Assembly: GCA_037447605.1 (NCBI GenBank)
Contig: CM074808.1
Location: 496,001 to 560,000 of the forward strand
Length of the DNA: 64,000 nt
Origin: Zygnema circumcarinatum SAG 698-1b
Taxonomy: Eukaryota; Plantae; Zygnematophyceae
Reading direction: 5' to 3'
Shown: one piece after another, positions 21,230 through 60,305 of the stretch
Layout of the letters: each line of letters begins with the position of its first letter
How positions within the stretch are numbered: the first letter of the stretch is position 1
Position numbers and translations under genes: made by a program
The notes under the pieces: model-generated
The model's database searches: none
The model's input: only the letters and a program-made list of their open reading frames with translations
What the model was told of the DNA's origin: nothing

Positions 21230-21800
21230 TTCGGACCAGTGGATCGGCAACCATTGGACAACCATTGGATGGCAATGGTTGGACGTCTACTGGTTGGCAA
21301 CCAGTCGAATGGTTGTTTCGGTCCGCAACCACTGGTTGGCAACCAGTCGAATGGTTATATCCATTAAATCAAATGGTTGGCAACCATTAAATCACTAGTT
21401 GTAGCGAACTGAACGCTACAGCTACCAAAATGCCGTCGGCGTTTCGGAGAAAACTATTACGGTTCGGCCGTACAGAATCTCCGTACAATCGTACGACTCG
21501 GCTGTACGAATCCGTACGCATCTGTACGCATTAGGCTTGTTACACTAGTTGTCAACGGTTGGCAACCCACCAAAAAACACATACGACCCATTTTTGCAAT
21601 TTTTTTTAATTTCAGAAATTCAATGGTTGCCAACCATTGGATCACTGGTTCCGAACCAGTCGAATGGTTGTTTCAGTCCTGCGCCACTGGTTCCAAACCA
21701 GTCGAATGGTTGTTTCGATCCGGCGGCACTGGTTGCCAACCAGTCGAATGGTTGTTTCGGTCCGCAACCACTGGTTGCCAACCAGTCGACTGGTTTGTCT
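21230..21800. repeat. Palindrome arrays (ACTGGTT-N3-AACCAGT and AATGGTTGNCAACCATT, ~42-bp period)
   Basis: Two sub-arrays, 21230-21390 and 21620-21800. Segment 21565-21830 is nearly the reverse complement of 50830-51087 and 57550-57811. Confidence 0.88.
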
Positions 21801-22357
21801 AATGGTCCGATCTGTTTACACTGACCCGGTGGCGCTCTTCCCTTTTCAAACCCTCCCCCTCCCCCTCCGTCATACTCGGTCGCTGCCGTCGACGGACGCT
21901 CCATGTGAGCGTCGCGTGCGACCGTTCAGAATTGAGTGAAACTTTTATTACATAGAGCTTCAGTTTTCTCGCCCGTACTGTACGAAAAACGACACAAGAC
22001 ACTGGTCAGCCTGCGCGCACCTCCTCCTAGGCTATTCCCGCCGGTGATTGGTCGAATGGCGTTGTTGGGCTGTAAGAAGTACATAAAACAGGAGTTTTTA
22101 TCCGATTCGTACCAAATTGAGACACACCAAAACCTGTAAGGCAAAAGATCCGTACGGCAGCCAATACAGTACAGTACAGTACAGTACAGTACCGTACATT
22201 AAGTGACCCGTACAGTTAATAAAGTGGCTTTCTATGTGAAAAAAAAACGAAAAATTGAACGGCGTTCGCTGGCGCCCTTCGGCAGTTAGGGTTTGCGGGC
22301 CGTCCGGAAAGCCGGGGGCCGCCAAGGGAGCTTCTTTTTCGGAGGGAGGGAGCAGCC

Positions 22358-29548: not shown

Positions 29549-29649
29549 GGCTGCCCCTCTCAATAAAAGCTCCGAAATTGGCCCAAAAGCTGCGCTGCTG
29601 TGGGAGAGAGCTGCCCCCAAGCTATGGCTGCGGAAAGGGCGGCAGAGGG

Positions 29650-31300: not shown

Positions 31301-31713
31301 CGTACCAGAAAAGCCCTGCCGGCCATTTTCGGGCAGCCCAGAGGGGCCAAAACGTTTCGGGCCTGCCCAGGCTCTGGCTGACAGGGAGGGAGGGGGGGTC
31401 AAGAAAGGAAAGCCTCCAGTCATCTCCTGAGAGAGCTTGGACCGCACGCAGCCATGGCGGCCACCTACTGCGACTGCTGAAAGTGCCCTCGCCCTCGCCC
31501 CTCGCTCCTCTTACAAGCATCCTCCTCCTCGCTCCTTCCGTGCTTTGGCTCCTCTTTCTTGCATATCTCCATCCCTCTCTTCCTTCACTCCCTCCCTTTT
31601 GCGCCCCCTCCTTCCGTCTGCCTTTTCTCCCTCTCCCTCCACCCTCTCCCTCCCTCTCCTTCTCCATCTCCTCTCCCTCTCTCCCTCCCCCTCCCTCCCT
31701 CTCCGGCTCGAAG

Positions 31714-40319: not shown

Positions 40320-41281
40320 TAAGCGGTATTATGTTAGAGTTCGTATACGTTACGTGCGTATCGTATGGTATTGTATGCGTACCGTGAGGATTTGATCTGC
40401 TTGACTCCTAAGGCGCCCGTCTCGTATACCGTGCGACAAATTTTTATTAGTACTTGCGTCTGGCGTAAAAGCGTGACCCATGTTTGAAATCCGTTTAGAT
40501 TAACGGATTTTGTATTGGAGAATAGGTCGAGGTTAGGTTAACACCCTAATACGTTAACATTGAGTTCTGGGTACAAAAAGTGGTTTAAATAAAATGGAGA
40601 ATTTCTTGAGGGGCCGCACTGTACAAAGGTGGAAAATATTATGGGGGTCAATATGCGGCATGGGAGGGCCGACGCTTGAGGCGTCAATGGCGGAACTGCA
40701 CCCGCGTGGCAACCTCGACCCAAAGCAGATCAGGTGAGGACAACTTTTCTACCGTAGGCTCGCGCCCGCATCGAGAACCCGCGCGCCCGGCGTGTGTGCG
40801 GCGCAAATACTTGTCGGTCACCATGATGTCCGGGGATCCTGCTCTTGTAGCGGCGCGGAGATCCGATTGTCTACCACAAAAGATCTCTCACTCGAAAGAT
40901 CAAGGGGGTGATTAGCCAAAAAAAAAAAGTACATTTTTTCCCAAAAGGGGGCGCCGATATCCAAAAAGTGGGGCCGCTGTATCATTTTCCAAAATTCGCA
41001 CCAATTTTGCCGAAACCACTTTTTTGTACGGTAACTTCGTGTTAGCGTACAATTGGTACAATTCGTACAATTCGTACTAATCTGACTAGCCGTACTAGCT
41101 GTACTAGCCGTCACGGGCTTACGCAAAACTCACCTATTCTCCCCTCTCGTGCCGCCGTCAGAGGCGCTCGCTCTTCTCCCCTTCTTCTTGGCTTCGATAC
41201 GATACGATATGGTACGAAACTCCCCGATATGGTACTATCCGTACTAGCCGTACAAGCTGTAGTACAGTGGGGGGTCCTCGT
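40320..41281. repeat. GATAC/GTAC-rich repeat family member (host of gypsy insertion)
   Basis: 41000-41250 is homologous to 49800-50000 and 56510-56720; carries an inverted copy of 37930-38150. Confidence 0.7.
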
Positions 41282-44200
41282 TGTAGCGTAACGGAGCTGC
41301 GTTCGACGGATTTGCGTCAGTTCAATTGTACTTGACGTATGCCTCTTCCGTGTCACGGATCAACGGAATCCAGGAGCTGCCAACGGAGATTGAGAGAAGG
41401 CGGCGCCATGCGTTGGCGGCCCGCGAGAACGACACACCATCCAGCAAAGGCGCACTCGCGAGAACACCGCCTGAGGCCGCCGGGAGGTATCGATAGATTG
41501 ACCTATCCGAAGGCTCCGCGTGGTCGGTCAAAGCCTACCGATTGGGCGGTTGGCCAATTAGAGGCATCGCTGCTAAGACTCAAGATCTATTGTCAGTGTT
41601 AAGTAGATGGGATGTCAGTGATGCTTCTTTGTCTTTTAGTGCTGGGCTTAGTATTTGTATTTGCTGTGTGGTTTGTTGTCTTGTTCTTCTTTCTTCTTTT
41701 CCTTCCTCTTGATTCTGACCTTGAGATGCTAGAAGTAAGAGAGAGAGAGAGAGAGAGAGAGAGTTCCATGCCATAGATAGAGAGCGAGAGAGAGAGAGAA
41801 AGAGTCTTCTTCATTAGCATTTTAGACGTCCCGATACATTGATTAGACAAAGATTTGGTGAAGACAATTTCATTGTAATGACATTCCCCAACCAACATTT
41901 GGGAGTGAGATTTCAAATACCACCTTTATCTAAGTTGTGTCTACATTTTTCCCTCGCGTCACTATGCCAAGCCCCTATCTTGCTCTGTCCTGCCTTGCAG
42001 GACTCTCAATGACCCCTGATCACTAGAAGCCTAGCGAAGAGACTAGCCGAGGAGATGACAGGGGAGGAGGGTCCCCAAGGAAGGGCTCTTTGCGCATCAA
42101 GTCCGGCCGCCGGTGGGAGCGTCTTGAGAATCCCCGTCTTCATTTGCGCGTACACTCACAGATCCCGGATCCTGGCTCTATGCTGCAGGCAGACCCACAG
42201 CACCACCCCAACCCTACGTCAGTTTCAGCACGGACACGCGAGTGGCCGTACAGCACCTGCAGCTAGCTCAGCAGTCTTTGTTTAACCCCACTTATCTTGG
42301 TATCAGAGCTGAAGGTTTTGCAGATCCACGTACCTCGATACGTGAGGCTGCCGATCCTGTGACCCGTGTCACAGCCGCCATGGATGAAGAGCTGCAGCAA
42401 GAGGGACAAGCAGATCTTCATGAGTATTCAGAGGAAGACTTGGCACCTCAAGAAGAAGAAGAACAGGCGATCGGAAATCCAAGGACGGATTCAGACTCAG
42501 AGGAAGAAGCAGTCAGAGAGAGACTGAAGATGGGCATCACCGAAGAGAACCCTTATCCCAGTCTGGCTTACCTTGAGCAGATCGAGTCGATTGAAGAGCT
42601 GCAGCGACTCCATCTAGGCAGTGATGGCCATAAACTTCGCTGGCAATATGCACGCCGGATGATCAAGCTTGCGGCTGCCGGTCTTATCCACGGCCTTGCG
42701 TGCGTGAAGAGAGAGTGCCGTTGAACCTGAGGTCCCCGCAGCATTACGAGAGCCGAACCGGGATCTCGATCCGGATAACTACTTGCACCGGGGTCCCTTG
42801 AAACGCGCCTTTGCGACACTTGCTGATCTTTCTGACGAAGCGAGGAATCATCGAGAAGACACCCTCCTCCGGCTTTCCGCGACTTACCCATCCAGAGCGG
42901 CCCGAGGCGAAGCGGCCAGGGGGCAAGAGGCGGGACGATCGCATGGACCCTCGGCTTTGAACCAACACAGAAGAAACACACGAGTGGATCACGAGTTCCC
43001 GACAAGATGGAAGAGATGATGACAAAAGCTGATAGCCTTGATTCCACGAAAAGAGAGTGAGGTGAGGATACCGCGGGCATCATCACTAGAGGCTTCACGG
43101 CAGGAAATCTGAAGAGTCTTGGTTGAGACACCTTGAGGAGAAGCGTATAGCGAACTGAAGGAGACGATGGATCAGCTTGCCCTTAGGCGGAAGGCGAGAG
43201 CGATCAAGCCCCGGAAAACTGTCGAAAGCAGCACCAGCGGATGTAAAGTCGCCACCACGACAAGGAACACATTCAAGCAAGCTTTTCGAGACAGCGTTGG
43301 ATTTGAATCCGATCGCATGCTAGACGACTTATTTCGCTGAATACTACGATGATGGCGGTTGTTTGAATTCGCTGAGCGCGCTTTGTGCGCATAGCAAATC
43401 TGATCGAACTTGCACGACTTTAAGTGCTCAGTGGTTCCGCCAAGGCCATCGTGAGATCTCCACACGGATGCGTGGTGAGACAACCCGCAGCCGGATGCCG
43501 GGCATTGTTAGGCTGTGAGCGAGGTCGGAAGGATCCCGAGAGAGAGGCAACCGACATGTCTGACCACATTACATGAGCAGCTACGAGGATCCGCGACAAG
43601 ATGCGGCTCTACCAGCGGTTCACGAAGACCACGAGAATCAGCGGTTATTCCACAGAATCCCTACGCTACATCTACTCGGAACAAGCCTTCCTTCTCCGGC
43701 GTCACTGCTCAGGACGTCCGGGCAGCCCCTATGGTGCAGCCTCTGGCTATAGCCAGCGCGACCAAGCCCCTTCCCCTTTCCCCGTACCCTCATGATCCGG
43801 CGCATCCCATTGAGCCAGCGGTGAATCCTCACATACCAGATGTTTCTCGTCCAGGATATCGGGCTCCTTATTCCGATCGCACACCCGAAGAGAGAGAAGC
43901 TGCCAGGGCCGATCTGCGCCGTCGGATGACAGAGGCAGGGGTTCCGGAGGGCGTATGTCTTGCCTGCGGCCTGAATCATAATCCGCGGCTGCGTTGCGGA
44001 CCATGGACCTGCACCTTCTGCCAGATCACGGGACATGATGCCGTGTGTGCATCGCGAGGAACTCTCAGTGAGAAGGCGAGAAGGGGAAAGAAGCTGGTGA
44101 AGGAGCTCACTGCGAGATCACCTTCATGGATATGCTCATTTTGCTCCCACACCGCAGAGCTCCGGCTCCTTTAGCAGCCTCCAACTCCTTCACCCGCTTA

Positions 44201-47200
44201 CACCATCCTGCAACGACCACCTATCCATCTGCACCCCATGGACTCCCCCTCCCTGTCAAACGTATTGGGTCTTTGAGCCGATCTTGCTGCGATCCGCCGC
44301 GCGAGGTTGCCGCGGCATTTCCAGCGGCAGCAATAGATCCCCATCGCCGAAGGATGCTCCAGCGGATGTGCAGGGTACAAGCTGCCGCCAGCGAGCTCAC
44401 TGTCGACCGAAGCGTCTCCATTCTCATCCCCACGGTATACGCGAAATGTCAACGGCGCGGTTCACCAGACGCGGCTCCTTGCGTCGCCACCCATCGAAGA
44501 GCGGTCATCCCTCCCTCCACAGGTCATCGCCAGGATCCACTGCGAGGAGAGGTGAAGATCACCGATGAAAGAGGAAGCAAACTGGCGAAGCGCGGCGAAG
44601 CGGCAACGCGGCGACGAAGATACGCGTCAATCCGCCATCTCGGAAGGCTCGTTTCTACCCCAAGCAGCCCGGCGTCGACACCCAAAATGACGGCTATCAC
44701 GATTGAGCATGGTTTATCCAACTCATGGGGAGACAAGGCTAAGATTGGCGTTACCTTGTCTGATTGATGCGGCTTGTACTGAGAGTCTTTGCCGTAGTGG
44801 TTGAAGAAAAGGCCCAGCCCGGCGGTCACGAGAGCCTGCGGCCTCCACAGTTCTGTATCTCCTCAGGGCGTCCCCTCGCGTATCCACCACATGGCTACGG
44901 CGTCTCCGCCGGACCCAGTCCGCTCCCCTCGCCATCCTCCTCGCCAGATTCAGATCCTCCCTCTCATCCCAACGCCCAACGTGCGGATCATCGTCAATGT
45001 ATGGCTCAACGGTCATCCCAGCAAAGCCATGATCGACACGGGGGCTATGCGCACAGTTCTGTCCAAGCCTGTGATGAAGGCGGCAGGGGTTAAGTTGGAC
45101 AAGACACTTGAGCCCATCCCCCGATATGTGGGAGTTGAAGGGAGCTTACATGAAGGATTGGGCAGCGCCCAAGTGGTCATCAGTCTTGGCGAGATGGGAG
45201 CCCGCGGTGAATCACCCGGTCATCGGCCCGTGAACCGCCTATTATCTGTTGGGCTCGAATTGGCTCACATCAGCGATGGGAGCACAAATAGAGCTTTACT
45301 CATGTAGTACCTTGCTCTGTGGCCCGGGGCCAATTTGCTCCTTATCATCCTGAGTCCCATGCCACCTCCGCGCCTTCCCCGAAGCGCCACGCCCGGCCTT
45401 GGTCTCCTGCAGTCACCATGTACCATTGATTGGCAGCCCCCATTCTTCTTATGGATCGGCGATTACGATCTCGCGATGTGAGACTCCCATACTGCTCCTG
45501 AGTCGGCTCTCGAAGTGCGCCCGGCGGAAGAAGCTATTCTTGCATGGGTGATACGCGACTTTTCCCCATGAGACCACGCCAGGTGATGAGTGGTTGGAAA
45601 TAGAGGCGATCGATTAAGACTCTTGATCCTCTGAACCCGTCAGCATTCTCCCGGCTTCAGCAAGTCTTTGCGCGAAATCACTAGTTTTAGCGCGGCGATT
45701 ATTTCGGCGTCAGCAGACTCGCGATTGAGCACCACATCGATGCGGGGGATGCACTCCGGTGATGACCTGGCTCACTAAAGCACTTTCAGCGCGGCTGATG
45801 TCGAGCAGCAGTTGGCGAGCGTGGGCTGCGGGATTGATGGAACACCGGAGAAGGGCCGTGGGCGGCCAGCGGATTCACGCTAACCGGATAAGCGTATTTC
45901 CGACAGTAGGGAATTTCTGAAAAGCTGAATGCAACCAGCGGTGGGGTCCTACACATTACCCAGGATGTGGACCTGATTCTCCACGGCGTCCACGATGACC
46001 GGTGGTTCTCGGCCCATGACATGCGAAATCGCCACAGCGAGATCCCCTACTTGGCCGGTGATATTTGCAAAAGCCGGGGCTTACATACAGCAGCGCTTTG
46101 TCGCGATGGGCGATTAGCCATTGAGCTCCAGAATTCCGTCCGGACTGCGGCGCACGGCCAACTGGTGTTCGGCCCGCAATGGGTGCGCCTGCTTGAGCCT
46201 TCGTGGATGATGCCGATCCACGGCAAATTTGGTCCTCAGCGCAACACATTGACCAAGTCCACAAGCTGGTACGTGATCTTGGCGTCACGAAGATTGCACC
46301 GAGAGAAGTGCAAATGGGGCGCGAGGAGATGTTCATCTCGAAGACTTACTTTCAGCGTCAAATGGCACGAAACCATCAACTTCGATAAGATTAGGCGATT
46401 GCCACCTCTGCCGATTCAGGTTTCCTATTTCATTTCGAGTCTTCTTTGGGGCTCACCTCGATACATCGCCGGTTAAATGAGGCGCCTTTATCGCGCGTCC
46501 CTACGTGCGCGGGAAGCACGGAGTCCAGCATCACGAATGGAGCGGCGAGGATTTAGCCTTCGCTCCCGAGTGCCCTCGCCGGGAGCTCCTTGCCTGCATC
46601 GATTGACCCCCGCGCTTCCGCCCGGCTATTGGCCAGAAGCAGGTCGGGCGGGGCTTTAGGCGTGTGACCAAGCATTCTCCGGATAGAACACCGATTGATT
46701 TTGCAAAGCGATGCGATTTGGCTTAGAGACAGTATAGCCCTGCGAGGGGAGAGGCGCGGCTATCCTCCCAGGCACTCGAAGTTCAAAGCTCTTCACGGCT
46801 GCAGCCCGTTATCATCAGGATACGACCACATGCCCCTCACTTGGCTGCACATCATGGCTACCCTACGACCTAAGTTTGCACGATGGGTGATGAAGTTGGA
46901 GGAGTATAATGTGCTTAAGGTCACCCACCGTCCGTGGCAATCCGCGGCAATCGCGGCGGCCTCGGTCATGATCCTTGACTCCCCTCCTCACACATCGCGA
47001 TCCGGCCCGTTCCACGAGCCGTCCACCACCCGCCCCTCGCGGAACCACGAGCATCTTCCGGTAGAGATTTTATTGCCGCTCAAGCACATGATGTCTATTG
47101 GCGGATGGGCTGACCGATATTCGACCACCGCCACCACCCTCCATCGTTGAGTACGACTTCACCACGGCCACACACCCCATCGCGGATCGGTGGGAAATCC

Positions 47201-49786
47201 TCATGGATGGCGATGGCGGCGGCTCCTTACTTCCTCCCCATTTCTGGCGCTGATAGCGTCCATTCGGAGCTCACTCCCATACGCGCTCGTTGCCGAGCCC
47301 GCTACCTTTGCCCCCCTTTGTCACGGATAAGAGGCATTTTACTCCTTGTCGGAACTTCTCTCGCGATGATGGCGGACGGTCTCTGCATTTCGCCAAGGCC
47401 TTCCCGTCCCATTCCCTAACGAGCGTCTGGAAATCCTGGACGTCGCCCACGATGCCCAACCTGCAGGCTTCCACCTCGGACAGAAGAAGATGGTGGCTCA
47501 GTTGCAGGAGCGCTACTATTGGCCCGGCCTCCATGGCGCGGTGAGCCGCTACATTGAAACCTGCACCCGCTGCCAACGCGGCAAGCGCTCTGCTCCCCCC
47601 AACCGCCAACCCCTCGAGATGGGTGAGATCCCAATACGCGGCGTCGCCGAAGACTGGAACATCGACACCTTTTCTATCCCCGGCTGGCACCTCGCTACGA
47701 CCGGGTCCCTGGCCCAGTGAGCGAGATCGCCCAGAATGAGTAGAGTTGCTTCTGAGAATCTAAGCATTAGTCCACTCTGCCCGCCTCACGGCGGCCATCA
47801 TTCACGCCCACTCTCTCCACTACTCACATCCCTCTAATGATGGCACGAATACAAAGGGGCCTTTGCCAGTATCACGGGACTTCATCATCCACCGCACCTC
47901 TAGCCCACTACTCCCCTGGCGAGAATGGGCTTTACTTGAGCAATCACCATTAGGGCGGTCAAGGATCGTGCGTCCGTATTTCTTGTGGGCCCCAGGCCGA
48001 GGCCCGGCGCGAAGGTCATCCTCCACGGTCTTCGCATTATAACGCCTCAGATCCACTCCTCCGGGCTTCTCTCCTGAGCTCCTACATGGCGTAAGCCCGC
48101 ATTCCCGCCGACTCCTCTCTGCTGAGCCTCTTACGATGGCCTCCCGGATCGGAGTCGACCAGCTTCCGACTCTGGCCTGGAAACCCCAAACCCCTGGGCC
48201 TGGCCTCCCACCACCTCGAGCGGCGCCTGACGACAACTCACCGGCAGGAGGTTAAGCCTTGTACTCTCCAGCCAATCGAGGTAGCGCCACATCGGCTCAT
48301 TTGGCTCAAGAATCCTTGAGCCGACTCATGGGCTTTTCGTGGTTGGGCCCCTTCATTTAATGTCGATAGTGAATCCCGGAGTTAGGCCATCATTGAGCTC
48401 GACTCTGAGTAAGGCACGCGTGGCGTTCACACTAGATCGACATTAGATGCCGCCCGCGTCGGCAGTTCCTCGCGATGGCCCAGGCGTTCTTGGAAACAAT
48501 AGCGGTCTCCTCATACCCCTACTGCCATAGCGACTCCTCATTGGTCCATTTAATTCGCCACTTTTGCGGCTTACGCCCAGCATTGCGCCATCGCTTTCGA
48601 TTCAATTTGTCTTACTCCCTCCTCCACCTCCGATCCCGCCGATACTCCCCATTTCCGAATGTACGCGGAAGCTTCTCCCGGTGGCCAGGCTTCGCCTCGT
48701 AGCGGCCGTCAACGTCATCATGGTCCCCTCCCGCCGCTGTCTCTTCTTCCTTGCTTGCTTGGCCACATTGCACTTATTTTCCCGGCATGTGCTACGGATG
48801 TAGCGTAGCGGGCTAATTAAGCCGGATTTCGCGTCCAGTTCAGTAGCCGCAGCGTATACTCTTGAGTATCCTGCGGATCGGAATCGGGGGCGCCAGCGGA
48901 GGTGAGAAAGCGGCGCCATGCGTTAGCGGCCGGAACGACACACCATCAGCCGAGCGCACTCCAGGAACACGCGGACATGCGATTATCATTCGTTGACCTA
49001 TCAAAGAAGGCTCCGTAATGGGTGAGCCTCTCGGTAGGCGGTTGGCCAATTAGAAACATCCTTCTTGGAACTCAAGATCTATTGTAGGTGTTAAGTAGAT
49101 GGGATGTCATTGATGCTTCTTTGTCTTTTTAGTCTTTGAAGCTTAGTATTTGTATTTCTTTGTGTGGTTTGTTGTCTTGTTCTTCTTTCTTCTTTTTCCT
49201 TCTCTTGATTCACGACAACAGTGCTAAGTAAGAGAGAGAGAGAGAGAGTTCCATGCCATAGATAGAAGGCGAGAGAGAGAGAGAAGAGTCTTCTTCTGGC
49301 GATAGCATTTAGGCGTCCCATTATTGACCCGATTAGACAAAGATTTCGGTGAGAAGACAATTTCATTATAATGACATTCCCCAGCCAACATTTGGTAGGT
49401 GATTTCTAAAAATACCACCTTTATCTAAGTTGTCACCAACCCTCTGGCTGTCACACTATGCAGCCCACTATCTTGCTCTATCACGCCTTGCATTGCTCTC
49501 ATTGACCAATGATCACTAGAAGCCTAGCTAAGAGACTAGTAGGAGAGGACGGGGAGGAGATCCCCAAGGAAGGGCTGCTGGCATCAAGTCCGGCCCGTTG
49601 GGAGCGTCTTGAGAATCTCGTCTTCGGCTGGCGGCGTACCTCGAATCCAGGATCAAGCTGCATCTTTAGCGAGGCGGACCACAGCACCACCCCAACCCTA
49701 AGTCGGTTTCATACGGACCGCAGTGGCAAATACGGCCTACGGCCTTTCGGCCCGATCTTTGTTTAACCCACTTATCTTGTGCTACA
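41282..49786 (+). mobile_element. Full-length but frameshifted Ty3/gypsy LTR retrotransposon (element a), ~8.5 kb
   Basis: 5' LTR 41282-42297 (TGTAGCG...), PBS 42298-42309, gag with CTFCQITGHDAVC knuckle (~44000), protease IDTGA (~45030), RT (~45800-46400), RNase H (~46700-46950), integrase HHCC/core (~47400-48150), 3' LTR 48799-49786 (...GCTACA). Order PR-RT-RH-INT; no chromodomain seen. A possible TCGT TSD (41278-41281) appears only at the duplicate 3' end (56473-56476). Confidence 0.9.
42298..42309 (+). other. Primer-binding site for initiator tRNA-Met
   Basis: TGGTATCAGAGC, the canonical plant tRNA-iMet PBS. Confidence 0.92.
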
Positions 49787-51087
49787 TAAAGTATTTACCA
49801 CCTAAGGAGTCGTCCTCAATATTTTAATTTCTGAAACCACCTTTGCATGCGGTAACACATTGTTGGCGATACTTATTTATCTTGTTAAATGCTTGGCCAG
49901 GTACTAAGCCCGTCTTTATCATCTTGGCAGATTCTGGGGTTCACATAAAACTCACCCTATCTCCTTTCGTGCGGTAAGAAGCTGCGTCTTCTCCCCTTCT
50001 TCTTGGCCCCACGTCACGATCACGATGCGAAAGCGGTCGGTGCGATATTTTGCGATACTAGGCGATACGATCTGGCCAGATGGCATTGTCGATACTTGGC
50101 CGTGCGAGCTGAAGACGAACAGCAATGGCTTCGATGCATCGCGTGGCGATATGGCGGAAATGCGATCACGATATTAGCGAACTGATGCGATCGCGGTGCA
50201 ATATCATGCGGTACGCTACGATGCGGTCCAACATGAACTCTAACATAATACCACACGTCGATTCGTAACACGAACCTTATATATGCAAAATTAATATTTA
50301 CCTCATATTGGCTTTGGAACGGGGTGGAAAAATATGAGGGCCTCTTTAGCAAGATTCTGGCGCTCAATTTAAACGACGATGCGATCGCGGTACGATATAC
50401 CAGAGAAAACGATGCGATACGCTGCGTGCGGACATGCATGAACTCCTAACATAATTCGCTCGCTTTATTGGTAACGGACCTTATATTTGCCAAAAACAAT
50501 ATTTTCGCCCGATTTTTGCCAAATGTAGGTGGAAAATATGATGGGGTCCTACTGTACCATGCGCGGGACCGGAAAAACCCGAATTGCTGTTGGATTCGGT
50601 AACTTCTGGCCGTCGATTGAGAAATCTTCGCCGTCCGATGCGTTGAAGGTAGCCGTTGCGAACTGGAGGGCCGTTGGATGCGTTGGCTATGGACCGTAAT
50701 TGCCGTTGGATACGAGAGGGAAAGGAACGGTAAAAGCGAGAGCGGAAGCTACGGAAGACCGTTGGATTGAGAGGAACGCGTGAGATGCGATTGACCGTTG
50801 GATTCTGAGGCACGTTGATCGTTGGGTGAAATTGTTGCACAGATCGGACCATTAGACAAACTAGTCGACTAGTTGGCAACCAGTGGTTGCGGACCGAAAC
50901 AACCATTCGACTGGTTGCCAACCAGTGCCGCCGGATCGAAACAACCATTCGACTGGTTTGGAACCAGTGGCGCAGGACTGAAACAACCATTCGACTGGTT
51001 CGGAACAAGTGATCCAATGGTTGGCAACCATTGAATTTCTGAAATGATGCCTTTTTGCAAAAATGGGTCGTATGTGTTTTGACGGGT
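49787..51087. repeat. GATAC-rich repeat plus palindrome array between two tail-to-tail gypsy elements
   Basis: Near-identical copy at 56473-57811; array 50870-51050 homologous to 21620-21800. Confidence 0.8.
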
Positions 51088-52095
51088 TGTAGCGCACAAG
51101 ATAAGTGGGGTTGAGAAGGCTGCTGAGCTAGTTCTGCAGTCTTTGTCTGACCACCGGCGTCCGAATCTTTGGCTGGCGATGGGGTTGGGGTGGTCTTTGT
51201 GGGTGCTGCGACATAGAGCCAAGATCCGGGGATTGAGGAGGGAATGCGGCCTTGGCGAGGCGTAGGGATTACGAGCGTTCCCCACCGGCTGGACCCGATG
51301 CGCCAAGAGCCCTTCCTTGGGGACTCTCCTCCCCGTCTCTCCTGGCTAGTCTCTTAGCTAGGCTTCTAGTGATCATTGTTGGTCATTGAGGAGGAATGCG
51401 AGGCGAGGATAAGAGCAAGATAGGAGCTGGGCATAGTGACAGCAGCAGGAAAACAGGACAAAACTTAGATAAATGTGGTATTTTGGAAACACACCCCAGC
51501 CAGCGGTTCGCTGGGGAATGTCATTACAATGAAATTGTCTTCCCACTGAAATCTTTGTCTAACTGGGCTGAATGGGGCGTCTAAATCTTTATCAGCAAAG
51601 AAGACTCTTTCTCTCTCTCTCTCTCTATCTATGGCATGGAACTCTCTCTCTCTCTCTCTCTTACTTAGCATGCATTCTTTGTAACTCAAGAGGAAGAAGA
51701 GAAGAAGAAGAACAAGACAACAAACCACGACAAATACAAATACTAAGCCCGGCACTAAAAGACAAACAAGCATCGCGACATCCCATCTACTTAGCTGTGA
51801 CAATAGATCTTGGAGTCTTAAGCGGTGGCCAGTCTGATTGGCCAACTGCTTAGCGAGAGCTTTGTTGACTCGTGGGGCAGCGGATAGGTCAGCGAATGGC
51901 TTGTCGGCGGCATCTTGGCGCTTCGAGTCGCCTTCTGGCTGGATGGTGTGTGCCGTTCCGTGGGCATAGCGCTGGCGCGCCTCTTAATCTCGTTGGCGGC
52001 TCACGGATTCGGTGATGAAGTGACCTTTGAAGAGGCATATGTCAGAAGTACAATTGGTATGGCTGAATCCGTCGAGAGCGCCAGCTCCGTTATTA

Positions 52096-52817
52096 TGGCA
52101 CGACTGAAACCGCCTCTTCAGCACAGATCACACACACACCGACACTTTCGAGTTGTTGAGAGAGAGCAAGAGAGAGCTTGAGTGGCAGCCGGCGAAGTGC
52201 AACCGGAATGCCCGATGCGTTGGTTGGGTGACGTGATTACGCTACTAAGCTTCCCCGTCGAACCTCTACCAGCATGGAGGATTAGGCGAACGTCAATAAG
52301 CGGACGCCCGCGTGTTCCTCGACTTCCGAATGGAGTGGTGGCCTAACGTCACAGTGCTACCGCCCGCGTGCGGCGCGCCCGCAACCTTGGCAGCGCCGCC
52401 CATCTCTGTCCGGTGCAATTAGTCTCACCTTGTAGCCTTGAGTCCAGCTATCGTATCCCGGCCTGCTTAATTACTTGGGTGTGTCGCGGGCGAAGCGGAA
52501 AAGAGAATCAAAGAGGATCGGGCGGGGCCGATATCCATCGCGAGACGGATTGGTCCGTGAATGCCGTTAGTCCGTGATCCTCCTCTACGCTGAGAGGAGG
52601 GGACCTTGGCCGGTGACGTGGGGCCCATAGAGATTATGTGGCAGCCCCACGGGTGAACCAGTTCTTACGGTTCGAACCTAGGACCTCCGTCGTCCTATAG
52701 GGTATCGATGCCCTACTTAGTTAAGTCTTGCATTGAATGGAAACATAAAACTTACGCCCGAACTCTAAGTAACGCCCTTCCCCTTGGGGTGGCTGTAGCG
52801 TTTACTTCTGATTCACA
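52096..52817 (-). mobile_element. ~720-bp insertion (possible solo LTR, TG...CA) into the left end of the element b LTR
   Basis: Sequence absent from the other LTR copies; minus-strand ends TGTGAA...GCCA. The TSD is not clean. Confidence 0.3.
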
Positions 52818-53315
52818 CGCTATCTGTAGCACATGCCGGGGGGGGGGAACAAGCGCACGCCCCTGCGGGCGCAAGGAAGAAGAGACAAAGGGCAGGGGAG
52901 GAGCCAAGGATGACGTGGACGGGAGGCGAGTCGGTGGCCGTGTGGAGAAGCTTCCTCGTACATTCGGCAAGGGGGGGTATCGGCAGGACCGGAGGGGGAG
53001 AAGGGAGGAAGACAAATTCGGAAATCGAAAGATACGGCCACGGCCGAGCGCAATATTGTAGCGGCAAAAGTGGCGGGAATTAGAAATGGACCAATGAGGT
53101 CGGCATGGCGGGGGCGTGCGAGACATGGCTGTCGATTACCTGCTTTAGCTTCAGCCATCAGCGGGGAGGAACGGTGGCGATAAGCGGCCGCGAATGTCGA
53201 TCGATTGTGAGCGCCCGGCGGGCGTTCCCGCAAATTAGAGCCTCGAAATGATGGCCCAACCGGGATCTCCGGCGGACCCGGCCACAAATGAAGGGGCCCA
53301 ACCCGCGGAAGCGCG

Positions 53316-54251
53316 TTAGTGGGTTTGGCCGAGATTCACGAGCCAAATGAGCTGGCGTGGCGTGACCTGATTGGGCGGGAGAGCAGCGCGTCGGCGCCTC
53401 CCAAAGTCGGTGAGTTGTCGCCTGTGCGCGCGGTCGAGGTGGTGGGAGGCCATGGAATCTAGGGTTCGGAAGCGGAGGGCCAGGAGCTGAAGCTGGGCGA
53501 TCCGATCCGGGGGAGGCGCGTCATCGTGGAAGAGGGGCTCAGCAGAGAGGAGGTCAAGGGGAATGCGGGGCTTACGGCCATAGAGGAGCTCGTAGGGAGA
53601 GAAGCCAGTGGAGGAGTGAACGGAGGTGTTGTACGTGAAGACCAGGGAGGGGATGACCTCGCGCCAGTCCGCCTCCAGCTCCGCGCAGCCGCGGACGCAC
53701 GCATCCTTGACCGTCTGAATGGTACGTTCTGCAAGCCCATTCTGCCAGGGGGAGTAGGGGCTAGAGGTGCGGTGGATGATGCGGAAAACCTGCATTAGCT
53801 TGGCAAAGGCCCCCTTGTATTCGGTGCCATTGTCAGAGTGGACAGAGTAGGGGAGAGAGTGGCGGTGAATGATGGCCGTCAGGAGGCGGGCAGAGTGGAC
53901 GGAATGCTTAGATTCTGTAGCGTGAACCTCTACCCACTTGGTGTATCTGTCCACGGCTAGGAAGACCCGAATGTAGCCAGAGGGGGTGCCGAGCTGGGGG
54001 ATAGAAAAGGTGTGGATGTTCCAGTCTTCAGCGACGCCGCGTATTGGGATCTCACCCATCTCGAGGGGTTGGCGGTCGGGGGGAGCAGAGCGCTTGCCGC
54101 GTTGGCAGCGGGTGCAGGTTTCAATGTAGCGGCTCACCGCGCCATGGAGGCCGGGCCAATAGTAGCGCTCCTGCAACAGGGCCACCATCTTCTTCTGTCC
54201 GAGGTGGAAGCCTGCAGGTTGGGAATCGTGGGCGACGTCGAGAATTTCCAT
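53316..54251 (-). CDS. Gypsy integrase (HHCC + DDE); GPF motif in shifted frame downstream
   Basis: AHDS..GFHLG..RYYWPG..CTRCQRGK, AVDRYTKW, VHSDNGTEY, WQNGLAERT, YNTSVHSSTGFSPYELLYGR. Confidence 0.9.
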   Translation of the reverse strand: MEILDVAHDSQPAGFHLGQKKMVALLQERYYWPGLHGAVSRYIETCTRCQRGKRSAPPDRQPLEMGEIPIRGVAEDWNIHTFSIPQLGTPSGYIRVFLAVDRYTKWVEVHATESKHSVHSARLLTAIIHRHSLPYSVHSDNGTEYKGAFAKLMQVFRIIHRTSSPYSPWQNGLAERTIQTVKDACVRGCAELEADWREVIPSLVFTYNTSVHSSTGFSPYELLYGRKPRIPLDLLSAEPLFHDDAPPPDRIAQLQLLALRFRTLDSMASHHLDRAHRRQLTDFGRRRRAALPPNQVTPRQLIWLVNLGQTH

Positions 54252-54618
54252 ACGCTCGTTAGGGAATGGAACAGGAAGGCCGGAGGGGAGGTAAAGAATC
54301 TGTCCGTCATCATCGGCAGAGGATTACGGCGGCGGGCGGCCAGAGCCCTCGATTGTCGTGATAAAGGGGGTAGCGATGGTCATGGCGTGGCCTTGAAGGG
54401 AGAGTGAATGGACATCATTGGCGGGAAATGGGGAGGAAGTAAGGGCGTCGCCATCGTCATCATGAGGAGTTCCACCGGATCCGCATGGGGGGGTGGCGTG
54501 GGTGAAGTCGGGGTCCTCNNNNNNNNNNNNNNNNNNNNNNNNNNNNNNNNNNNNNNNNNNNNNNNNNNNNNNNNNNNNNNNNNNNNNNNNNNNNNNNNNN
54601 NNNNNNNNNNNNNNNNNN

Positions 54619-56472
54619 TACGAGCTCCTCTATGGCCGTGAAGCCCCGTGATTCCTCAATTCCCCGGCTGAGCCCCTCTTTCTACGACATGACGCCAGCT
54701 TCTCCTCCCCCGGATCGGGGTCGACCAGCTTCCCGCCCTCGCCCTCCGCCTAAACAACCCTAGATTCCATGGCCTCCCACCACTGGAACGAAGCGCATTT
54801 AATTTACAACTCACCACTTTGGGAGGCGCCGACGCTGCCGCCTCCCGCCTAATCGTAAATAGCCATTATCAGCCTCATTTGGCTCAAGAATCTCGCCAAA
54901 CCCACTCAACGGCTTTTCCCGTGCGGGTCGGGGCCCCTTCATTTGTGTCGTCCGGCCGGAGATCCTGCAGTTAGCCATCATTTCGAGGCTCCCGACTCTG
55001 GGCGGCACGCCCGCGCCGGGCGTTCACACTCAGATTCCACATCTGCGCCGCCACGCCGGGCTGTTCCTCCCCCCGATGAGCCAGAAGCGTGTTTATACCG
55101 ACAGTCACGGCCTCCCTCGTGACCCTCTCGCCATGATCTAATTCTCATTGGTCCATTTCTAATTCCCCGCCACTTTTTTGCCGCCAGCTTCATTACATTG
55201 TTCACGGCCAACCTCATTTCGAATTTGCGTCTTACTCCCTCCACCTCCTGGACATCCCGCTACCGATACTCCCCATTTCCTAATGTACGTTTAAGCTTCC
55301 TGCACGGCCGCCGATCTCGGGGCTCTCAAGGCCCCCTCTCGGCTCCACGCCATCATGGTCCCTCCCTCGCCTTGTCTTTTCTCTTTTCCTGGCGCCTCGC
55401 TAGGGCGCGCGCTTTGTTTTCTCGCATGCGCTAAGGTATGAAGAAAGTAACGGGAGCTGCGTTTCACGGATTTAAGGCCGGGCTCAATTGTACTTCGACG
55501 TGTGATGCCTCTTCCGTGTCACGGATCAACTAATCCGTGAGCCGCCAATCCGAGATCGGGAGAGAAGGCGGCACATGCGCTATGCCCACCAACAAAGACA
55601 CCATCCAAAGAAGGCGCACTCGAACACCGAGGCCGCCGACATCATTCGCTGACTCATCCTCAAGGCTCCATCGAATGGGCCGTGCCTCAAAGTGGGCAGT
55701 TACAATTAGAGACCGCCAACGCTGGCGACTCAAGATCTATTGTCGCTGCTAAGTAGACGTGATGTCGCGATGTCTTTGTCTTTTAGTGCTAGGCTTAGTA
55801 TTTGTATTTTGCTGTGTGGTTTGTTGTCTTGTTCTTCTTCTTCTTTTCCTTCCTCGCCATAAAAGAATGATGCTAAGTAAGAGAGAGAGAGAGAGAGAGA
55901 GTTCCATGCCACAGATGTGAGAGAGCCGCAGAGAGAGAGAAAGAGCGCCTTCTACGATAGCATTTAGACGGCCCCATTCAGCCCAGCTAGACAAAGATTT
56001 CAGTGAGAAGACAATTTCATTATAATGAGGCCCCCAGCCAACCGCCGCTGGGGTGAGTTTCCAAAATACCACCTTATCTAAGCTAAAAGTCCCCAAGCCG
56101 TCATCACCAAACAAGCCCCTATCTTTATGCTCTCCCCTTATCCTGCCTTGTATTGCTCTCTCACGACCAAATGACCACCAGTGTAAGCCTAGCTAAGACT
56201 AGCCGAGGAGAGTGACAGGGAGGAGGGTCCCTAAGGAAGGGCTCTTACATCAAGTCCAGCCAGCCGGTAACGCCTTCGCATCCCTACGCCTTCGGGTCAA
56301 GGCTGCACTCAATCCTCTCGGATCTCTGCTCTATGTCACAGTGCAGACCCACGAACATTCACCCCAACCCTATCGGGCCGGGCCAAAGACGGACACGCTT
56401 AGAGGGCTTGATAAAGACCTGCAGCCAGCTGCCCGCTAGGGGCCTGTTTAACCCCACTTATCTGCGGTTACA
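54619..56472 (+). mobile_element. Duplicate of the 3' end of element a (integrase tail, 3' UTR, LTR ~55445-56472)
   Basis: Collinear with 48075-49786 and followed by the same flank. Confidence 0.8.
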
Positions 56473-57811
56473 TCGTGATGGCACACCCTAAGGGAAGTGC
56501 TGCCCCTCAATATTTTCGGGCCCGATTTGCCGAAATCATCTGTGACGGTGAATTTGTGTTAGCCGTAACATTTGTACTGTTCGTACCGACCGCATTCAGC
56601 CGTATTCATTCGCATTTGAAGCCGCTACGGGTTTACGAAAATCCTCACTCTAATTCGCCAAAAGCCGCCGTAGAAGAGGCTTTTCTCGCCGCTTTTCTCC
56701 CTTCTTCTTCTTGCTTCGATAATGCATACGATAAATAAACGACGGGTAATGATATTTTACGATACTAGTAATACGATAATGCAAACTCGATATGGCATTG
56801 TCCGACGAGCCGCATTTTAGCTGAGACGGTAATAAATGTGAAAAGCGTAAAACTACGTCTATGCGTGACGATATGGCACGATACGATACGATATTAAACG
56901 AGACAGTACGATACGGTACAATATCGTACGGTACGCTACGTACGGTCCAACATGAACTCTAACATAATACCACACGTCAATTCGTAACACGAACCTTATA
57001 TATGCAAAATTAATATTTTCGCCTCATATTGGCCGGAACCAGGGTGGAAAATATGAGGACGCCCTACTGTAGCCGTTACGCGCTCGAATTTAAACGACAC
57101 GGTACGATGCGGTACGATATGCCAGAAAACGATACGATACGCTACGTACGGACATACATGAACTCTAACATAATTCCGCTCGCCTATTGGTAACACGGAC
57201 CTTATATTTGCCAAAAACAATATTTTCGCCCGATTTTTGCCAAATGTAGGTGGAAAATATGATGGGGTCCTACTGTACCATGCGCGGGACCGGAAAAACC
57301 CGAATTGCTGTTGGATTCGGTAACTTCTGGCCGTCGATTGAGAAATCTTCGCCGTCCGATGCGTTGAAGGTAGCCGTTGCGAACTGGAGGGCCGTTGGAT
57401 GCGTTTGGCTATGGACCGTAATTGCCGTTGGATACGAGAGGGAAAGGAACGGTAAAAGCGAGAGCGGAAGCTACGGAAGACCGTTGGATTGAGAGGAACG
57501 CGTGAGATGCGATTGACCGTTGGATTCTGAGGCACGTTGATCGTTGGGTGAAATTGTTGCACAGATCGGACCATTAGACAAACTAGTCGACTAGTTGGCA
57601 ACCAGTGGTTGCGGACCGAAACAACCATTCGACTGGTTGCCAACCAGTGCCGCCGGATCGAAACAACCATTCGACTGGTTTGGAACCAGTGGCGCAGGAC
57701 TGAAACAACCATTCGACTGGTTCGGAACAAGTGATCCAATGGTTGGCAACCATTGAATTTCTGAAATGATGCCTTTTTGCAAAAATGGGTCGTATGTGTT
57801 TTTTGGTGGGT

Positions 57812-57999
57812 TGTAGCACAAGATAAGTGGGGTTGAGAGAAGACTGCTGAGCTAGTTGCAGGTGCTGTACGGCCACCCGAGCGTCCGTGCTGAAACTGAC
57901 GTAGGGTTGGGGTGGTGCTGTGGGTCTGCCTGCAGCATAGAGCCAAGATCCGGGGGATTCAGAGGTACGCGCAGCGGAAGACGTAGGGATTCTGAAGAC
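57812..57999 (-). mobile_element. Right end of gypsy LTR (duplicate of 51088-51275), truncated by a gap
   Basis: TGTAGCACAAGATAAGTGGGG at 57812; same flank as 51088. Confidence 0.85.
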
Positions 58000-58009
58000 N
58001 NNNNNNNNN

Positions 58010-58450
58010 AGCGGTGAACTCGTGTCGAATCCCGAGTGACTTGAGGTGAGCAGAGAATTTGAGGGACCTGTATTCACCTCCATTGTCCGTTCGGATCCTC
58101 TGCACCTTCTCTCCGGTCTGCCTTTCTACCTCTAACTGCCAGGTCCGAAAGGTCTCAAACGCCTCACTTTTAAACTTCAGCAGTACTACCCATATCTTCC
58201 TGGAATAATCATCAGGAAGGTGATGAAATACCTTGAACCGCCCTTTGACTCGGGAGTGATCGGTCCGCATAGATCGCTGTGGACCAACTCCAGCAGCTTG
58301 GACGCGCGATGCTTCTCCGCTCCAAAGCTCTTGAAAGGGTGCCGGTGTATCTTGCCCGCCGCGCAGTCGGGGCAGACAGCTTCTGGTGTCGAGATCTTCG
58401 TCGAGGGGAGTCCCCGGACCAGGCTCTGTGTCGCGAGGGCCTCCAGGCCA
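58010..58450 (-). mobile_element. Ty1/copia GAG-pre-integrase/integrase fragment between N gaps
   Basis: CPDCAAGKIHRHPF, VHSDLCGPI, DDYSRKIWV, RIRTDNGGEY (frameshifted). Confidence 0.88.
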
Positions 58451-58639
58451 NNNNNNNNNNGCGCTCCTTAGTCGCGTCGCGCTCCGCCGTCGTCCGTACG
58501 CCCGAACATTTCGTTTCGGTTCGTCACGTCACGGTACCATGATTTAACCTCAGACTTTTCGCGTCAGCGCCCGCGCGACCATCCTTGTCGCTTGGCGTCC
58601 GCGCCTAAGTCCCAAGTCCTTCATGTCCTAGAGAGTCTA

Positions 58640-60305
58640 TGTCCCAAACAGTTGTACGGCCTCTAGCGCTGTACAACAAAACAAGACGGCACCTAAGGCA
58701 AATCCCGAAGCATCACAAACCACTTCATAAGGTTTGGACGGGTCCGCTAACCGGAGAGTGGGTGCGGTAACCAGGGCATGGCGTACACCCTCGAACGCGT
58801 CCTGGCATTCAGGGGTCCATGTGAAGGGGACACCGGAACGTGTCAAATTAGTCAAGGGAGTAACCAACGTACTAAACCCTTAGATGAACTTACGAAAATA
58901 ATTCGCAAATCCCAAGAAAGACCTCAACTGATGCAAGTCAGTCGGTGGTGCCCAAGTTTCTACCGCTGAAACTTTGGCAGGATCAGGCCGAAGACCCTGA
59001 TCGTTGAGGATATGCCCAAGGTAAAGCAACTCGCGTTGCATGAAGTGACACTTCTTCCTCTTGGCATAAAATTGGTGTTTCCTCAGGGTCTCAAACACTT
59101 TCCGAACGTGTTCAAGATGTTCCTCCTCTGTCTTACTGAAGACAAGGATATCATCGAGGTAAACCAAAACAAACTCGTCCATGCCGATGAACATTTCGTT
59201 CATGACAGCCTGGAAAGTCGCCGGAGCATTAGTCAATCCAAAGGGCAACACCTTGTATTGGAAATGACCAATACAGTAGAACTATGATTTTTGGTACATA
59301 AACTTAAAGTGGCAACACGGATCTGATATTTTACGAGCAAGATCGGTGAAGTAAACACTTTGGCCGTGAAGGCGATCCAGCAGATCATCAATGCGTGGTA
59401 AAAGCAAAACGGTTCTTTACGGTGATCTTGTTGAGTGCGCGATAATCAATGCACATCCTCAACGAGCCATCTTTCTTCCCAACAAACAAGATGGGCGCCC
59501 CAAAGGGGCTCTGACTGGGTTCTATCCAGCCCTTTTCACGTAAAGTTGCCAACTGCTTTCGCATCTCTTCGGTTTCTTTCGGACTTAACCGATAGATCGG
59601 CCGCCAAGGCGGCTTTTGCTCAGGTTCAAGAGGGATTGTATGCCCCCCTCCTCGGGAGGGTGGCAACCCTCTTGGAAGGTCATCAGGGAAGACATCCCTG
59701 AACTCGTCCAACAGAGGTTGGATTTGGGATGGAACAGCCGAGAGCACATCTGTAGGTGTGATCTGCCATTCTTGATCTTCGTCATGCACATCCTCAGTGG
59801 CTGCCATGACATGCACCATAAACAAGGTGCAACCCTCCTTTACGGCTTTGGCCAATTGCATGGCCGAGCAGAGATAAGGAGTAACATCCTGCGTGGTAGC
59901 AGTGGTGGGTGGTTTACCGGGGTGCAGTGTGATGCGCCGATCACCACTGCGAAGAATGCAGTGTGGGATGGAAAAGTCCAATTGGGCGTTGACCATGGTT
60001 AACCAAGCACTCCCTAAAATAACATCTGTACCAGAGGCCAGTTGTGTCAGAAGACACTTCACTGCCCCGGAGTAGGATTGGAGCTTGATCTTGAGTGTGA
60101 CGATGCCAGAGATCTGGCCCTTGCGTCCATCCCCGAAAGTAACACTTTCTGAATGGGGATCTGTGGTCAATTGAAATCTCTGGGTGAATGCAGAGCTAAC
60201 AAAGTTAGCATCTGCCCCAGTATCTAGCAGTATAACTGCTGGGTGGCCATTGGCTGAACCGATGAAGGTCATGGCACGATGGGCAAGGTGGAACATAGAT
60301 CGCAC
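58640..60305 (-). mobile_element. Different Ty3/gypsy family (chromovirus-like pol) fragment: protease, RT, start of RNase H
   Basis: [71 protein letters not shown]; frameshifted. Confidence 0.9.

What the first reader, a model, noticed from the sequence alone, without database searches (positions are those of the whole stretch)
41282..57827. Gypsy family with split termini: A-PBS-gag/pol-B-GA-A-B, with no polypurine tract
Seen: the 5' LTR ends ...CCCCACTTATCT (42297) and runs straight into the tRNA-Met PBS with no terminal CA. The 3' LTRs end ...CACTTATCT plus a further segment B = TGTGCTACA: exact at 49778-49786 and on the minus strand at 57812-57820, an 11-nt variant at 51088, a noisy variant at 56464-56472. 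B supplies the GCTACA that is the inverted repeat of the left end TGTAGC. The same B recurs immediately upstream of the 3' LTR, followed by a 2-nt GA spacer: CCCGGCA-TGTGCTACG-GA-TGTAGCG at 48781-48805, and exact TGTGCTACA-GA on the minus strand at 52833-52823. The sequence there is pyrimidine-rich, not a PPT. Knowledge: standard Ty3/gypsy elements have identical LTRs and a PPT next to U3. The A1-ORFs-B1-A2-B2 layout is the split-direct-repeat design of tyrosine-recombinase elements (Ngaro/PAT/TOC1), which are thought to use circular intermediates, but this element has a DDE integrase. Inference: the cDNA repeat may really be B-GA-A. End-joining to a circle and integrase cutting at the B|GA|A junction would give exactly this arrangement; a template switch adding B to the minus-strand start is an alternative. 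I do not know of a description of this. Caveats: only one 5' LTR is in view, the sequence is noisy, and the internal B of element a ends in G rather than A.
Basis: partly seen in the sequence, partly recalled or inferred. Interest (0 to 1): 0.85.

Follow-up and report, generated by a model that had tools for sequence, protein, structure and literature searches.

The report
Gypsy retrotransposon with split integrase ends
Old copies of a gypsy-type jumping gene in a freshwater green alga keep the 9-letter right-hand cutting site of their integrase just upstream of the second long repeat, where a polypurine tract should be, instead of after the first repeat. Ordinary reverse transcription cannot rebuild that layout, but this window holds only one decayed left end to show it.

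Summary
The anatomy is at the stated coordinates. The only 5' LTR in the window (41282-42297) runs straight into a perfect tRNA-Met PBS. Four other LTR ends carry an extra 9 nt (B, TGTGCTACA or variants). The same B plus a 2-nt spacer lies directly upstream of all three visible 3' LTR starts, and none has a polypurine tract.

New here:
- A paralogous empty site shows that terminal B is element DNA, not target.
- The B-spacer-LTR junction persists in three copies whose LTRs are only about 65-72% alike.
- The assembly gap separates two copies in opposite orientation.

Cautions:
- The 5' LTR and the "3' LTR" of "element a" are not a matched pair: about 69% alike, no target duplication, mosaic identity.
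- The copies are old, with broken frames.
- Only one 5' junction exists, and sequencing reads could not be consulted.

The scan has already noted this layout at eight or more other places in this genome, and three follow-ups reached the same reading. That is why I favour (about 0.5) a family-wide design in which the right end is rebuilt each cycle from the internal B through a joined-ends intermediate cut by integrase. A private 9-bp deletion in a canonical element is the main rival. It is a new variant of a known kind.

The parts
41282..42297 (+). 5' LTR (A) of copy a. It starts TGTAGCG and ends ...AACCCCACTTATCT, without the 9-nt B.
42298..42309 (+). PBS, a 12/12 match to the complement of the 3' end of plant initiator tRNA-Met (assignment from knowledge). 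It abuts the LTR directly.
42310..48787 (+). Degenerate gag-pol of copy a, with many frame breaks. Aspartic protease lies near 44990-45110, a weak RNase H match near 46820-46910, and the integrase H2C2 finger at 47418-47590. RT is not detectable.
48788..48798 (+). Internal B (TGTGCTACG) plus the GA spacer, directly upstream of LTR b. Together with the LTR start it forms the palindrome GCTAC(G/A)-GA-TGTAGC.
48799..49777 (+). It is only about 69% like the 5' LTR.
49778..49786 (+). Terminal B of LTR b, exact TGTGCTACA. It supplies the terminal CA and the inverted repeat of the left end.
51088..52091 (-). LTR c with its terminal B as an 11-nt variant (51088-51098). This is the 3' LTR of a minus-strand copy.
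52092..52816 (-). Unclassified insertion of about 725 bp that splits LTR c after its first few bases.
52817..52833 (-). On the minus strand: exact B (52833-52825), GA (52824-52823) and the LTR start TAGCGT (52822-52817).
52834..54518 (-). Internal 3' part of copy c, with an intact 311-aa integrase ORF (53316-54251: H2C2 finger plus rve core). It is cut off by the assembly gap.
54619..55426 (+). Internal 3' part of a different, plus-strand copy (d), starting at the gap.
55427..55438 (+). Degraded internal B (TGCGCTAAG) plus spacer (GTA) of copy d.
55439..56472 (+). LTR d, including its degraded terminal B (GCGGTTACA, 56464-56472).
57812..57999 (-). LTR e, the last 188 nt only, cut by the gap at 58000. 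It has an exact terminal B at 57812-57820. Its flank is paralogous to that of c.
21535..21630 (-). Paralogous empty target site. It is identical to the flank of e up to GGTGGGTTG, then continues as satellite-like repeat instead of B plus LTR.

Best explanation
These are old copies of a Ty3/gypsy-type LTR retrotransposon lineage of a zygnematophyte alga. Its right-hand integrase end (B, the last 9 nt, ending in CA) is not encoded between U5 and the PBS.

The element keeps one heritable copy of B, followed by a 2-nt spacer, directly upstream of U3, where a polypurine tract normally sits. There B and the LTR start form the palindrome that an LTR-LTR junction would have.

Inferred mechanism:
1. 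Plus-strand DNA starts at the upstream edge of B, so the cDNA repeat is B-GA-A.
2. The two cDNA ends become joined, either by end-joining into a two-LTR circle or by an end-to-end template jump of RT. This creates the junction U5|B-GA-U3.
3. Integrase cuts that palindrome on both strands after each CA. This gives a linear DNA with TG...CA ends that integrates as A-PBS-...-B-GA-A-B.

Shown here: the layout, the absence of a PPT, that terminal B belongs to the element, and a DDE integrase. Inferred: the start point of the plus strand, the joined intermediate, and cleavage by integrase.
For: - Exact B sits at two LTR ends and 2 nt upstream of one LTR start, far above chance. Variants sit at the homologous places in the other copies.
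- B-spacer-A is kept in three copies whose LTRs are only 65-72% alike.
- No PPT lies within 300 nt upstream of the LTR in any of the three. The nearest sense-strand purine tracts are more than 4 kb upstream or inside the LTR.
- The single 5' junction is clean. The 14 nt of U5 are identical to c, d and e, the PBS is 12/12, and only B is missing.
- An empty-site paralogue shows that terminal B is not target DNA.
- Logic: in ordinary reverse transcription both U5 ends descend from the 5' LTR, so a 5' LTR without B cannot give progeny with B at the 3' end.
- Precedent: foamy-virus and HIV-1 integrases cut the palindromic 2-LTR junction (PMC1180852, PMC1905944).
- Leads, not checked by me: the scan's notes report the same layout at eight or more other places in this genome, including young high-copy elements.
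Against: - Only one 5' LTR/PBS junction is in the window, and it belongs to a decayed copy with many indels and broken frames.
- That 5' LTR and LTR b are not a matched pair, and there is no target-site duplication.
- Identity between copies is mosaic: 98% next to about 50%. Long-range linkage in this assembly may therefore be unreliable.
- No joined form (a full U5 followed by B-GA-U3) and no predicted by-product (A-B-GA-A-PBS...B) is in the window.
- The model moves the plus-strand start only 11 nt upstream and still does not say what defines the primer.
- The short hairpin is not better than shuffles.
- Terminal and internal B do not visibly co-vary in b, c and d.
Confidence: 0.5

Rival explanations
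1. This is a canonical element. The true LTR is A plus B (TG...CA), both LTRs originally ended in B, and the only 5' LTR in view lost exactly 9 bp (TG-to-TG microhomology) during long decay. The internal B-GA is merely the unusual sequence that serves as plus-strand primer.
For: - Copy a is old. It has about 100-140 gap columns per kb against its relatives and broken frames.
- B and the PBS both begin with TG, so a slipped deletion is easy.
- All four other LTR ends have a normal TG...CA design.
Against: - It needs a deletion of exactly these 9 nt while the 26 nt around it stay perfect.
- It leaves unexplained why an exact copy of the U5 terminus sits where the PPT should be in three diverged copies.
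- The scan's notes report the same asymmetry in other copies, which independent deletions could not give (unchecked).
Confidence: 0.2
2. The right end is canonical and the left end is trimmed. Plus-strand synthesis starts somewhere upstream of B. Integrase uses the built-in pseudo-junction B-GA-A only to cut off the over-long left end. No joining of ends is needed, and the 5' LTR of intact copies carries B before the PBS.
For: - There is no PPT next to U3.
- The palindrome mimics the site that retroviral integrases cut internally (PMC1905944).
- It explains why internal B is conserved.
Against: - It still requires the 5' junction seen here to be a private deletion.
- No upstream PPT lies within 4 kb.
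- The other scan notes speak against B at 5' LTRs (unchecked).
Confidence: 0.15
3. This is an assembly artefact. The region is a patchwork of contigs and collapsed repeat copies, and the 5' junction, or the pairing of the parts, is a product of mis-assembly.
For: - There are five N gaps in the window.
- A 1.1-kb block is repeated at 91% overall, with about 500 nt at 100%.
- LTR e is c-like in its last 45 nt or so and a-like further in.
- Identity between a and c jumps from 98% to about 50%.
Against: - Host genes in the same window have long intact frames, so base quality is good.
- Mis-joining changes linkage over kilobases, not a 21-nt junction.
- B-GA-A is seen three times independently.
Confidence: 0.1

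Closest known systems
Ty3/gypsy (Metaviridae) LTR retrotransposons of plants and algae
   Same: - About 1-kb LTRs with a TGTAGC...GCTACA inverted repeat.
- A PBS for initiator tRNA-Met.
- Protease, then RNase H, then an H2C2 finger plus DDE (rve) integrase, in that order.
   Different: - There is no polypurine tract.
- The 5' LTR seen here lacks the terminal 9 nt with the CA.
- A copy of that terminus plus 2 nt precedes the 3' LTR.
- The integrase has no relative above 39% identity among 1.84 billion representatives.
Cleavage of the palindromic 2-LTR circle junction by retroviral integrase (prototype foamy virus, HIV-1; PMC1180852, PMC1905944)
   Same: A palindrome made of the U5 end, a few nucleotides and the U3 start is cut by integrase after each CA. 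This gives processed linear ends. It is the step the model needs.
   Different: In retroviruses the junction exists only in the circle, and both proviral LTRs are identical. Here the junction sequence is built into the element upstream of U3, and the integrated LTRs differ. No cleavage has been shown for this element.
Split-direct-repeat retrotransposons with tyrosine recombinase (Ngaro, PAT-like, TOC1 of the DIRS order)
   Same: The A1-ORFs-B1-A2-B2 order of terminal repeats. An internal B1-A2 junction mirrors the junction of the joined ends.
   Different: Those elements encode a tyrosine recombinase and have no DDE integrase, no tRNA PBS next to A1 and no TG...CA ends. Here B is only 9 nt, and the enzyme is a DDE integrase.
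HIV-1 3'-PPT mutants selected by integrase inhibitors (PMC11680205; seen only as title and abstract)
   Same: An altered PPT goes with circular viral DNA forms being used.
   Different: Those are drug-selected laboratory or clinical variants, not a natural design. I did not read the details.

Membership tests
Ty3/gypsy LTR retrotransposon | Two LTRs in direct orientation with TG...CA termini and short inverted repeats | tested here: inconclusive
   LTR ends b, c, d and e have TG...CA with TGTAGC/GCTACA. The only 5' LTR ends in ...TATCT without CA. LTRs a and b are only about 69% alike.
Ty3/gypsy LTR retrotransposon | tRNA primer binding site next to the 5' LTR | tested here: met
   TGGTATCAGAGC at 42298-42309, directly after the LTR. 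The tRNA assignment is from knowledge.
Ty3/gypsy LTR retrotransposon | Polypurine tract directly upstream of the 3' LTR | tested here: not met
   There is no 12-nt window with 9 or more purines in the 300 nt upstream of LTRs b, c or d. The sense strand there is pyrimidine-rich.
Ty3/gypsy LTR retrotransposon | pol order PR-RT-RNase H-IN with a DDE integrase | tested here: inconclusive
   PR (44801-45307), weak RNase H (46668-47147), H2C2 finger (47370-47717) and rve core (copy c, 53316-54251) lie in that order. RT gave no Pfam hit in the broken frames.
Ty3/gypsy LTR retrotransposon | Target-site duplication of 4-6 bp | tested here: inconclusive
   The flanks of a and b do not match. For c and e only one end is in view, and the other side of the empty site is not in the window.
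DIRS order (Ngaro/PAT/TOC1) split-direct-repeat elements | Tyrosine recombinase instead of a DDE integrase | tested here: not met
   The Pfam scans of the element's ORFs gave rve and Integrase_H2C2 and no recombinase. Not every small frame was scanned.
DIRS order (Ngaro/PAT/TOC1) split-direct-repeat elements | A1-ORFs-B1-A2-B2 arrangement of repeats | tested here: met
   The layout is A-PBS-pol-B-GA-A-B on copy a/b. The B-spacer-A-B part is also seen on c and d.
Elements that integrate from a joined-ends (2-LTR junction) intermediate | A molecule with a full U5 joined to B-GA-U3, and cleavage of it by the element's integrase | not testable with these tools
   No such junction is in the window. 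The metagenome scans were blank or at chance level.

The most novel reading that the evidence does not exclude
A natural lineage of DDE-integrase LTR retrotransposons has given up the polypurine tract and the U5-borne att site. It must pass through a joined-ends (2-LTR-circle-like) intermediate, and its integrase cuts a built-in palindromic junction. This would be a convergent, integrase-based counterpart of the split-repeat design of tyrosine-recombinase retroelements.
Probability: 0.4. Interest if true: 0.85.

Novelty: new variant of a known kind. Interest (0 to 1): 0.62.

Why it matters
Whether two-LTR circles can be productive intermediates has been argued for retroviruses for decades, and they are usually called dead ends. 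An element whose integrated structure can only be rebuilt through joined ends would be a natural system in which that route is obligatory.

It would also show that a retroelement can prime its plus strand without a polypurine tract. In practice, LTR finders that demand identical LTR ends and a PPT would mis-delimit or miss what the scan's other notes describe as a very abundant family in this alga's genome.

Tried and rejected
- A second 5' junction in the window. There is no other PBS, and tblastx found no other family copy outside 41-58 kb.
- Public relatives. The integrase ORF finds nothing above 30% identity in the word-indexed search or above 39% in the exhaustive search. A metagenome scan with the protein was blank. 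A DNA pattern for U5 end, 0-14 nt, then PBS gave two matches at chance level. One (L001) is a canonical ...ATAACA-G-PBS element from another organism.
- Two distant relatives were fetched (L003, L004). I did not analyse them because they are too remote to bear on this family.
- B as target sequence: rejected by the empty-site paralogue.
- B as a copy of the tRNA primer: rejected, because B does not resemble the PBS. That it is absent from the initiator tRNA is from memory only.
- The PPT-like GA tracts and GGGGAGGAGGG inside the LTR as the plus-strand start: rejected, because they would give a truncated 5' LTR, and the one seen is full length.
- One-LTR circles or concatemers cut at the palindrome: rejected, because they never contain a U5|B junction.
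- An RNA hairpin at B-GA-A is present in b and c, but it is no better than shuffles.
- Literature. I found no description of a PPT-less gypsy element with split termini.
Full report
**What is there**

The stretch holds pieces of at least four copies of one Ty3/gypsy-type family, not one tidy element. They are:
- a: 5' LTR 41282-42297, PBS 42298-42309, and a degenerate gag-pol running to 48787.
- b: LTR 48799-49786.
- c: a minus-strand copy with LTR 52091-51088 and internal part 52834-54518.
- d: a plus-strand copy with internal part 54619-55426 and LTR 55439-56472.
- e: the last 188 nt of a minus-strand LTR, 57999-57812, cut by a gap.

The assembly gap at 54519-54618 separates copy c (minus strand) from copy d (plus strand). 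The DNA to its right is the inverted homologue of 53066-53594. The two sides are therefore neither continuous nor in frame.

Pfam finds an aspartic protease, a weak RNase H and the H2C2 finger in copy a. Copy c has an intact 311-aa ORF with the H2C2 finger plus rve core. No recombinase was found.

Neighbouring host genes have long intact frames: acetylglutamate kinase, a class 3 lipase and a PC-esterase. The kinase is closest to Closterium, Mesotaenium and Spirogloea. The genome is therefore that of a zygnematophyte alga, and base quality in unique DNA is good.

- The 5' LTR ends ...AACCCCACTTATCT and is followed at once by TGGTATCAGAGC.
- LTR ends b and e add exact TGTGCTACA. End c adds an 11-nt variant and end d a degraded one.
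- The exact 9-mer occurs three times in 64 kb against 0.24 expected, each time at a predicted place.
- Upstream of each visible 3' LTR start lie the same 9-mer or a variant, a 2-nt (in d, 3-nt) spacer, and then the LTR start.
- In c the LTR is split after its first bases by an unclassified insertion of about 725 bp.
- No purine-rich window lies in the 300 nt upstream of any of the three LTR starts, and the sense strand there is pyrimidine-rich.
- The nearest sense-strand purine tracts are more than 4 kb upstream or inside the LTR.

- The flank of c and e belongs to a satellite-like repeat. An uninterrupted paralogue of it lies at 21535-21630. It matches the flank of e base for base up to GGTGGGTTG and then continues as repeat, where e has the reverse complement of B and the LTR. 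So at least 7 of the 9 nt of terminal B arrived with the element and are not target sequence.
- The LTRs of a, b, c and d are only 65-72% alike. Conserved blocks alternate with diverged ones, and transitions about equal transversions. The U5 end, B and the B-spacer-A junction are nevertheless retained. An exact copy of the U5 terminus at the PPT position cannot be chance.
- The 26 nt around the 5' junction are unblemished: 14 nt of U5 identical to c, d and e, and the PBS at 12/12. B alone is missing.

**Cautions**

- The 5' LTR of a is closest to e (88%). It is no closer to b than to c or d.
- The 5 nt flanking a and b do not match.
- The frames of a are broken throughout.
- Identity between a and c jumps from about 98% (47397-47650) to about 50% next door.
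- LTR e is c-like in its last 45 nt or so and a-like further in.
- The block LTR(+), 1.3-kb spacer, LTR(-) occurs twice (48799-52092 and 55447-57999), with identity from below 70% to 100%.
- The copies are therefore old and mosaic, by recombination or by assembly, and "element a" is probably not a single insertion.
- The claim that 5' LTRs lack B rests here on one junction. A 9-bp TG-to-TG deletion in such a copy cannot be excluded from this window alone.

**Mechanism**

In ordinary reverse transcription both U5 ends descend from the U5 next to the PBS. A 5' LTR without B therefore cannot yield progeny with B at the 3' end. I tried the following alternatives:
- tRNA remnants at the right end;
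- read-through transcripts;
- priming at the purine tracts inside the LTR;
- one-LTR circles;
- concatemers.

None of them creates a U5|B junction or a full-length 5' LTR.

The layout follows if three things happen. The plus strand starts at the upstream edge of B, so the cDNA repeat is B-GA-A. The ends become joined, by ligation or by an end-to-end template jump. Integrase then cuts the resulting palindrome after both CAs.

Integrase cutting such a junction has precedent in foamy virus and HIV-1 (PMC1180852, PMC1905944). The weak points are that nothing explains what defines the plus-strand primer, and that no joined form or predicted by-product is in view.

**Other notes of the scan**

The scan has already reported this layout on other DNA of the same genome, in eight or more first-reader notes. 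Three follow-ups (s1-332345, s1-321681, s1-332347) reached the same reading on other copies, some described as young and abundant. None saw a joined form.

I could not inspect those copies. They are leads, but independent identical deletions are not credible. They move my odds for a family-wide design from about 0.4 to about 0.5.

**Comparison and verdict**

The element works like a gypsy element in its proteins and PBS. It fails the PPT criterion, and its 5' LTR fails the CA-end criterion. It shares the A1...B1-A2-B2 order with Ngaro, PAT and TOC1 but has a DDE integrase, so it is not one of them. I found no description of such an element.

It is a new variant of a known kind. This window is a weak specimen of an interesting family, and its main contributions are the empty-site evidence and the conservation across diverged copies.

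Noticed in passing
window 48799-52092 and 55447-57999: The arrangement LTR(+), about 1.3 kb of spacer, LTR(-) occurs twice. Within it, 50474-50982 equals 57195-57704 at 100%, while neighbouring parts are 83% or below 70% alike. It could be a segmental duplication with conversion, or redundant assembly of one locus.
   Followed up: partly
window 52092-52816: An unclassified insertion of about 725 bp splits LTR c a few bases after its start. No tRNA, terminal repeats or ORF family were found. It contains a GGTTCGAACC motif reminiscent of a tRNA B box.
   Followed up: partly
window 50859-51011, 57581-57733, 21289-21815: A satellite-like repeat of about 42 bp (units such as AACCATTCGACTGGTTGCCAACCAGTG). 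It is the insertion target of copies c and e.
   Followed up: partly
window 58010-60305 (minus strand): Just beyond the 10-N gap lies a different retroelement. It has an rve integrase core (58010-58450) downstream of an aspartic protease (59388-60305) on the minus strand. That is a copia-like order, unrelated to LTR e beside it.
   Followed up: partly
window 41000-41281, 49787-50140, 56473-56900: The DNA upstream of the 5' LTR of a and downstream of LTRs b and d shares a repeated sequence with motifs such as GAAACCAC...GGTAAC and CTTCTCCCCTTCTTCTTGG, followed by CGATACGATA clusters. The family may prefer this repeat as a target, or b and d may be old duplicates.
   Followed up: partly
window 41731-41804 and homologous places in LTRs b, c, d: Two (GA)n-rich tracts, and further on GGGGAGGAGGG, are conserved in all LTR copies. 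They look like PPTs but lie inside U3. Their role is unknown.
   Followed up: partly
window 2960-3814, 28613-29791, 31483-33441: Intact host genes in long single frames: PC-esterase (+ strand), acetylglutamate kinase (minus strand) and class 3 lipase (+ strand). The kinase is 92% identical to a Logan-assembled protein and about 84% to Closterium proteins.
   Followed up: partly
L001 2980-3008: A metagenome contig carries CCACTTATCT-ATAACA-G-TGGTATCAGAGC, a canonical U5...CA plus PBS junction with the same 10-nt U5 motif. The match is at chance level, and the contig ends before any coding sequence.
   Followed up: no
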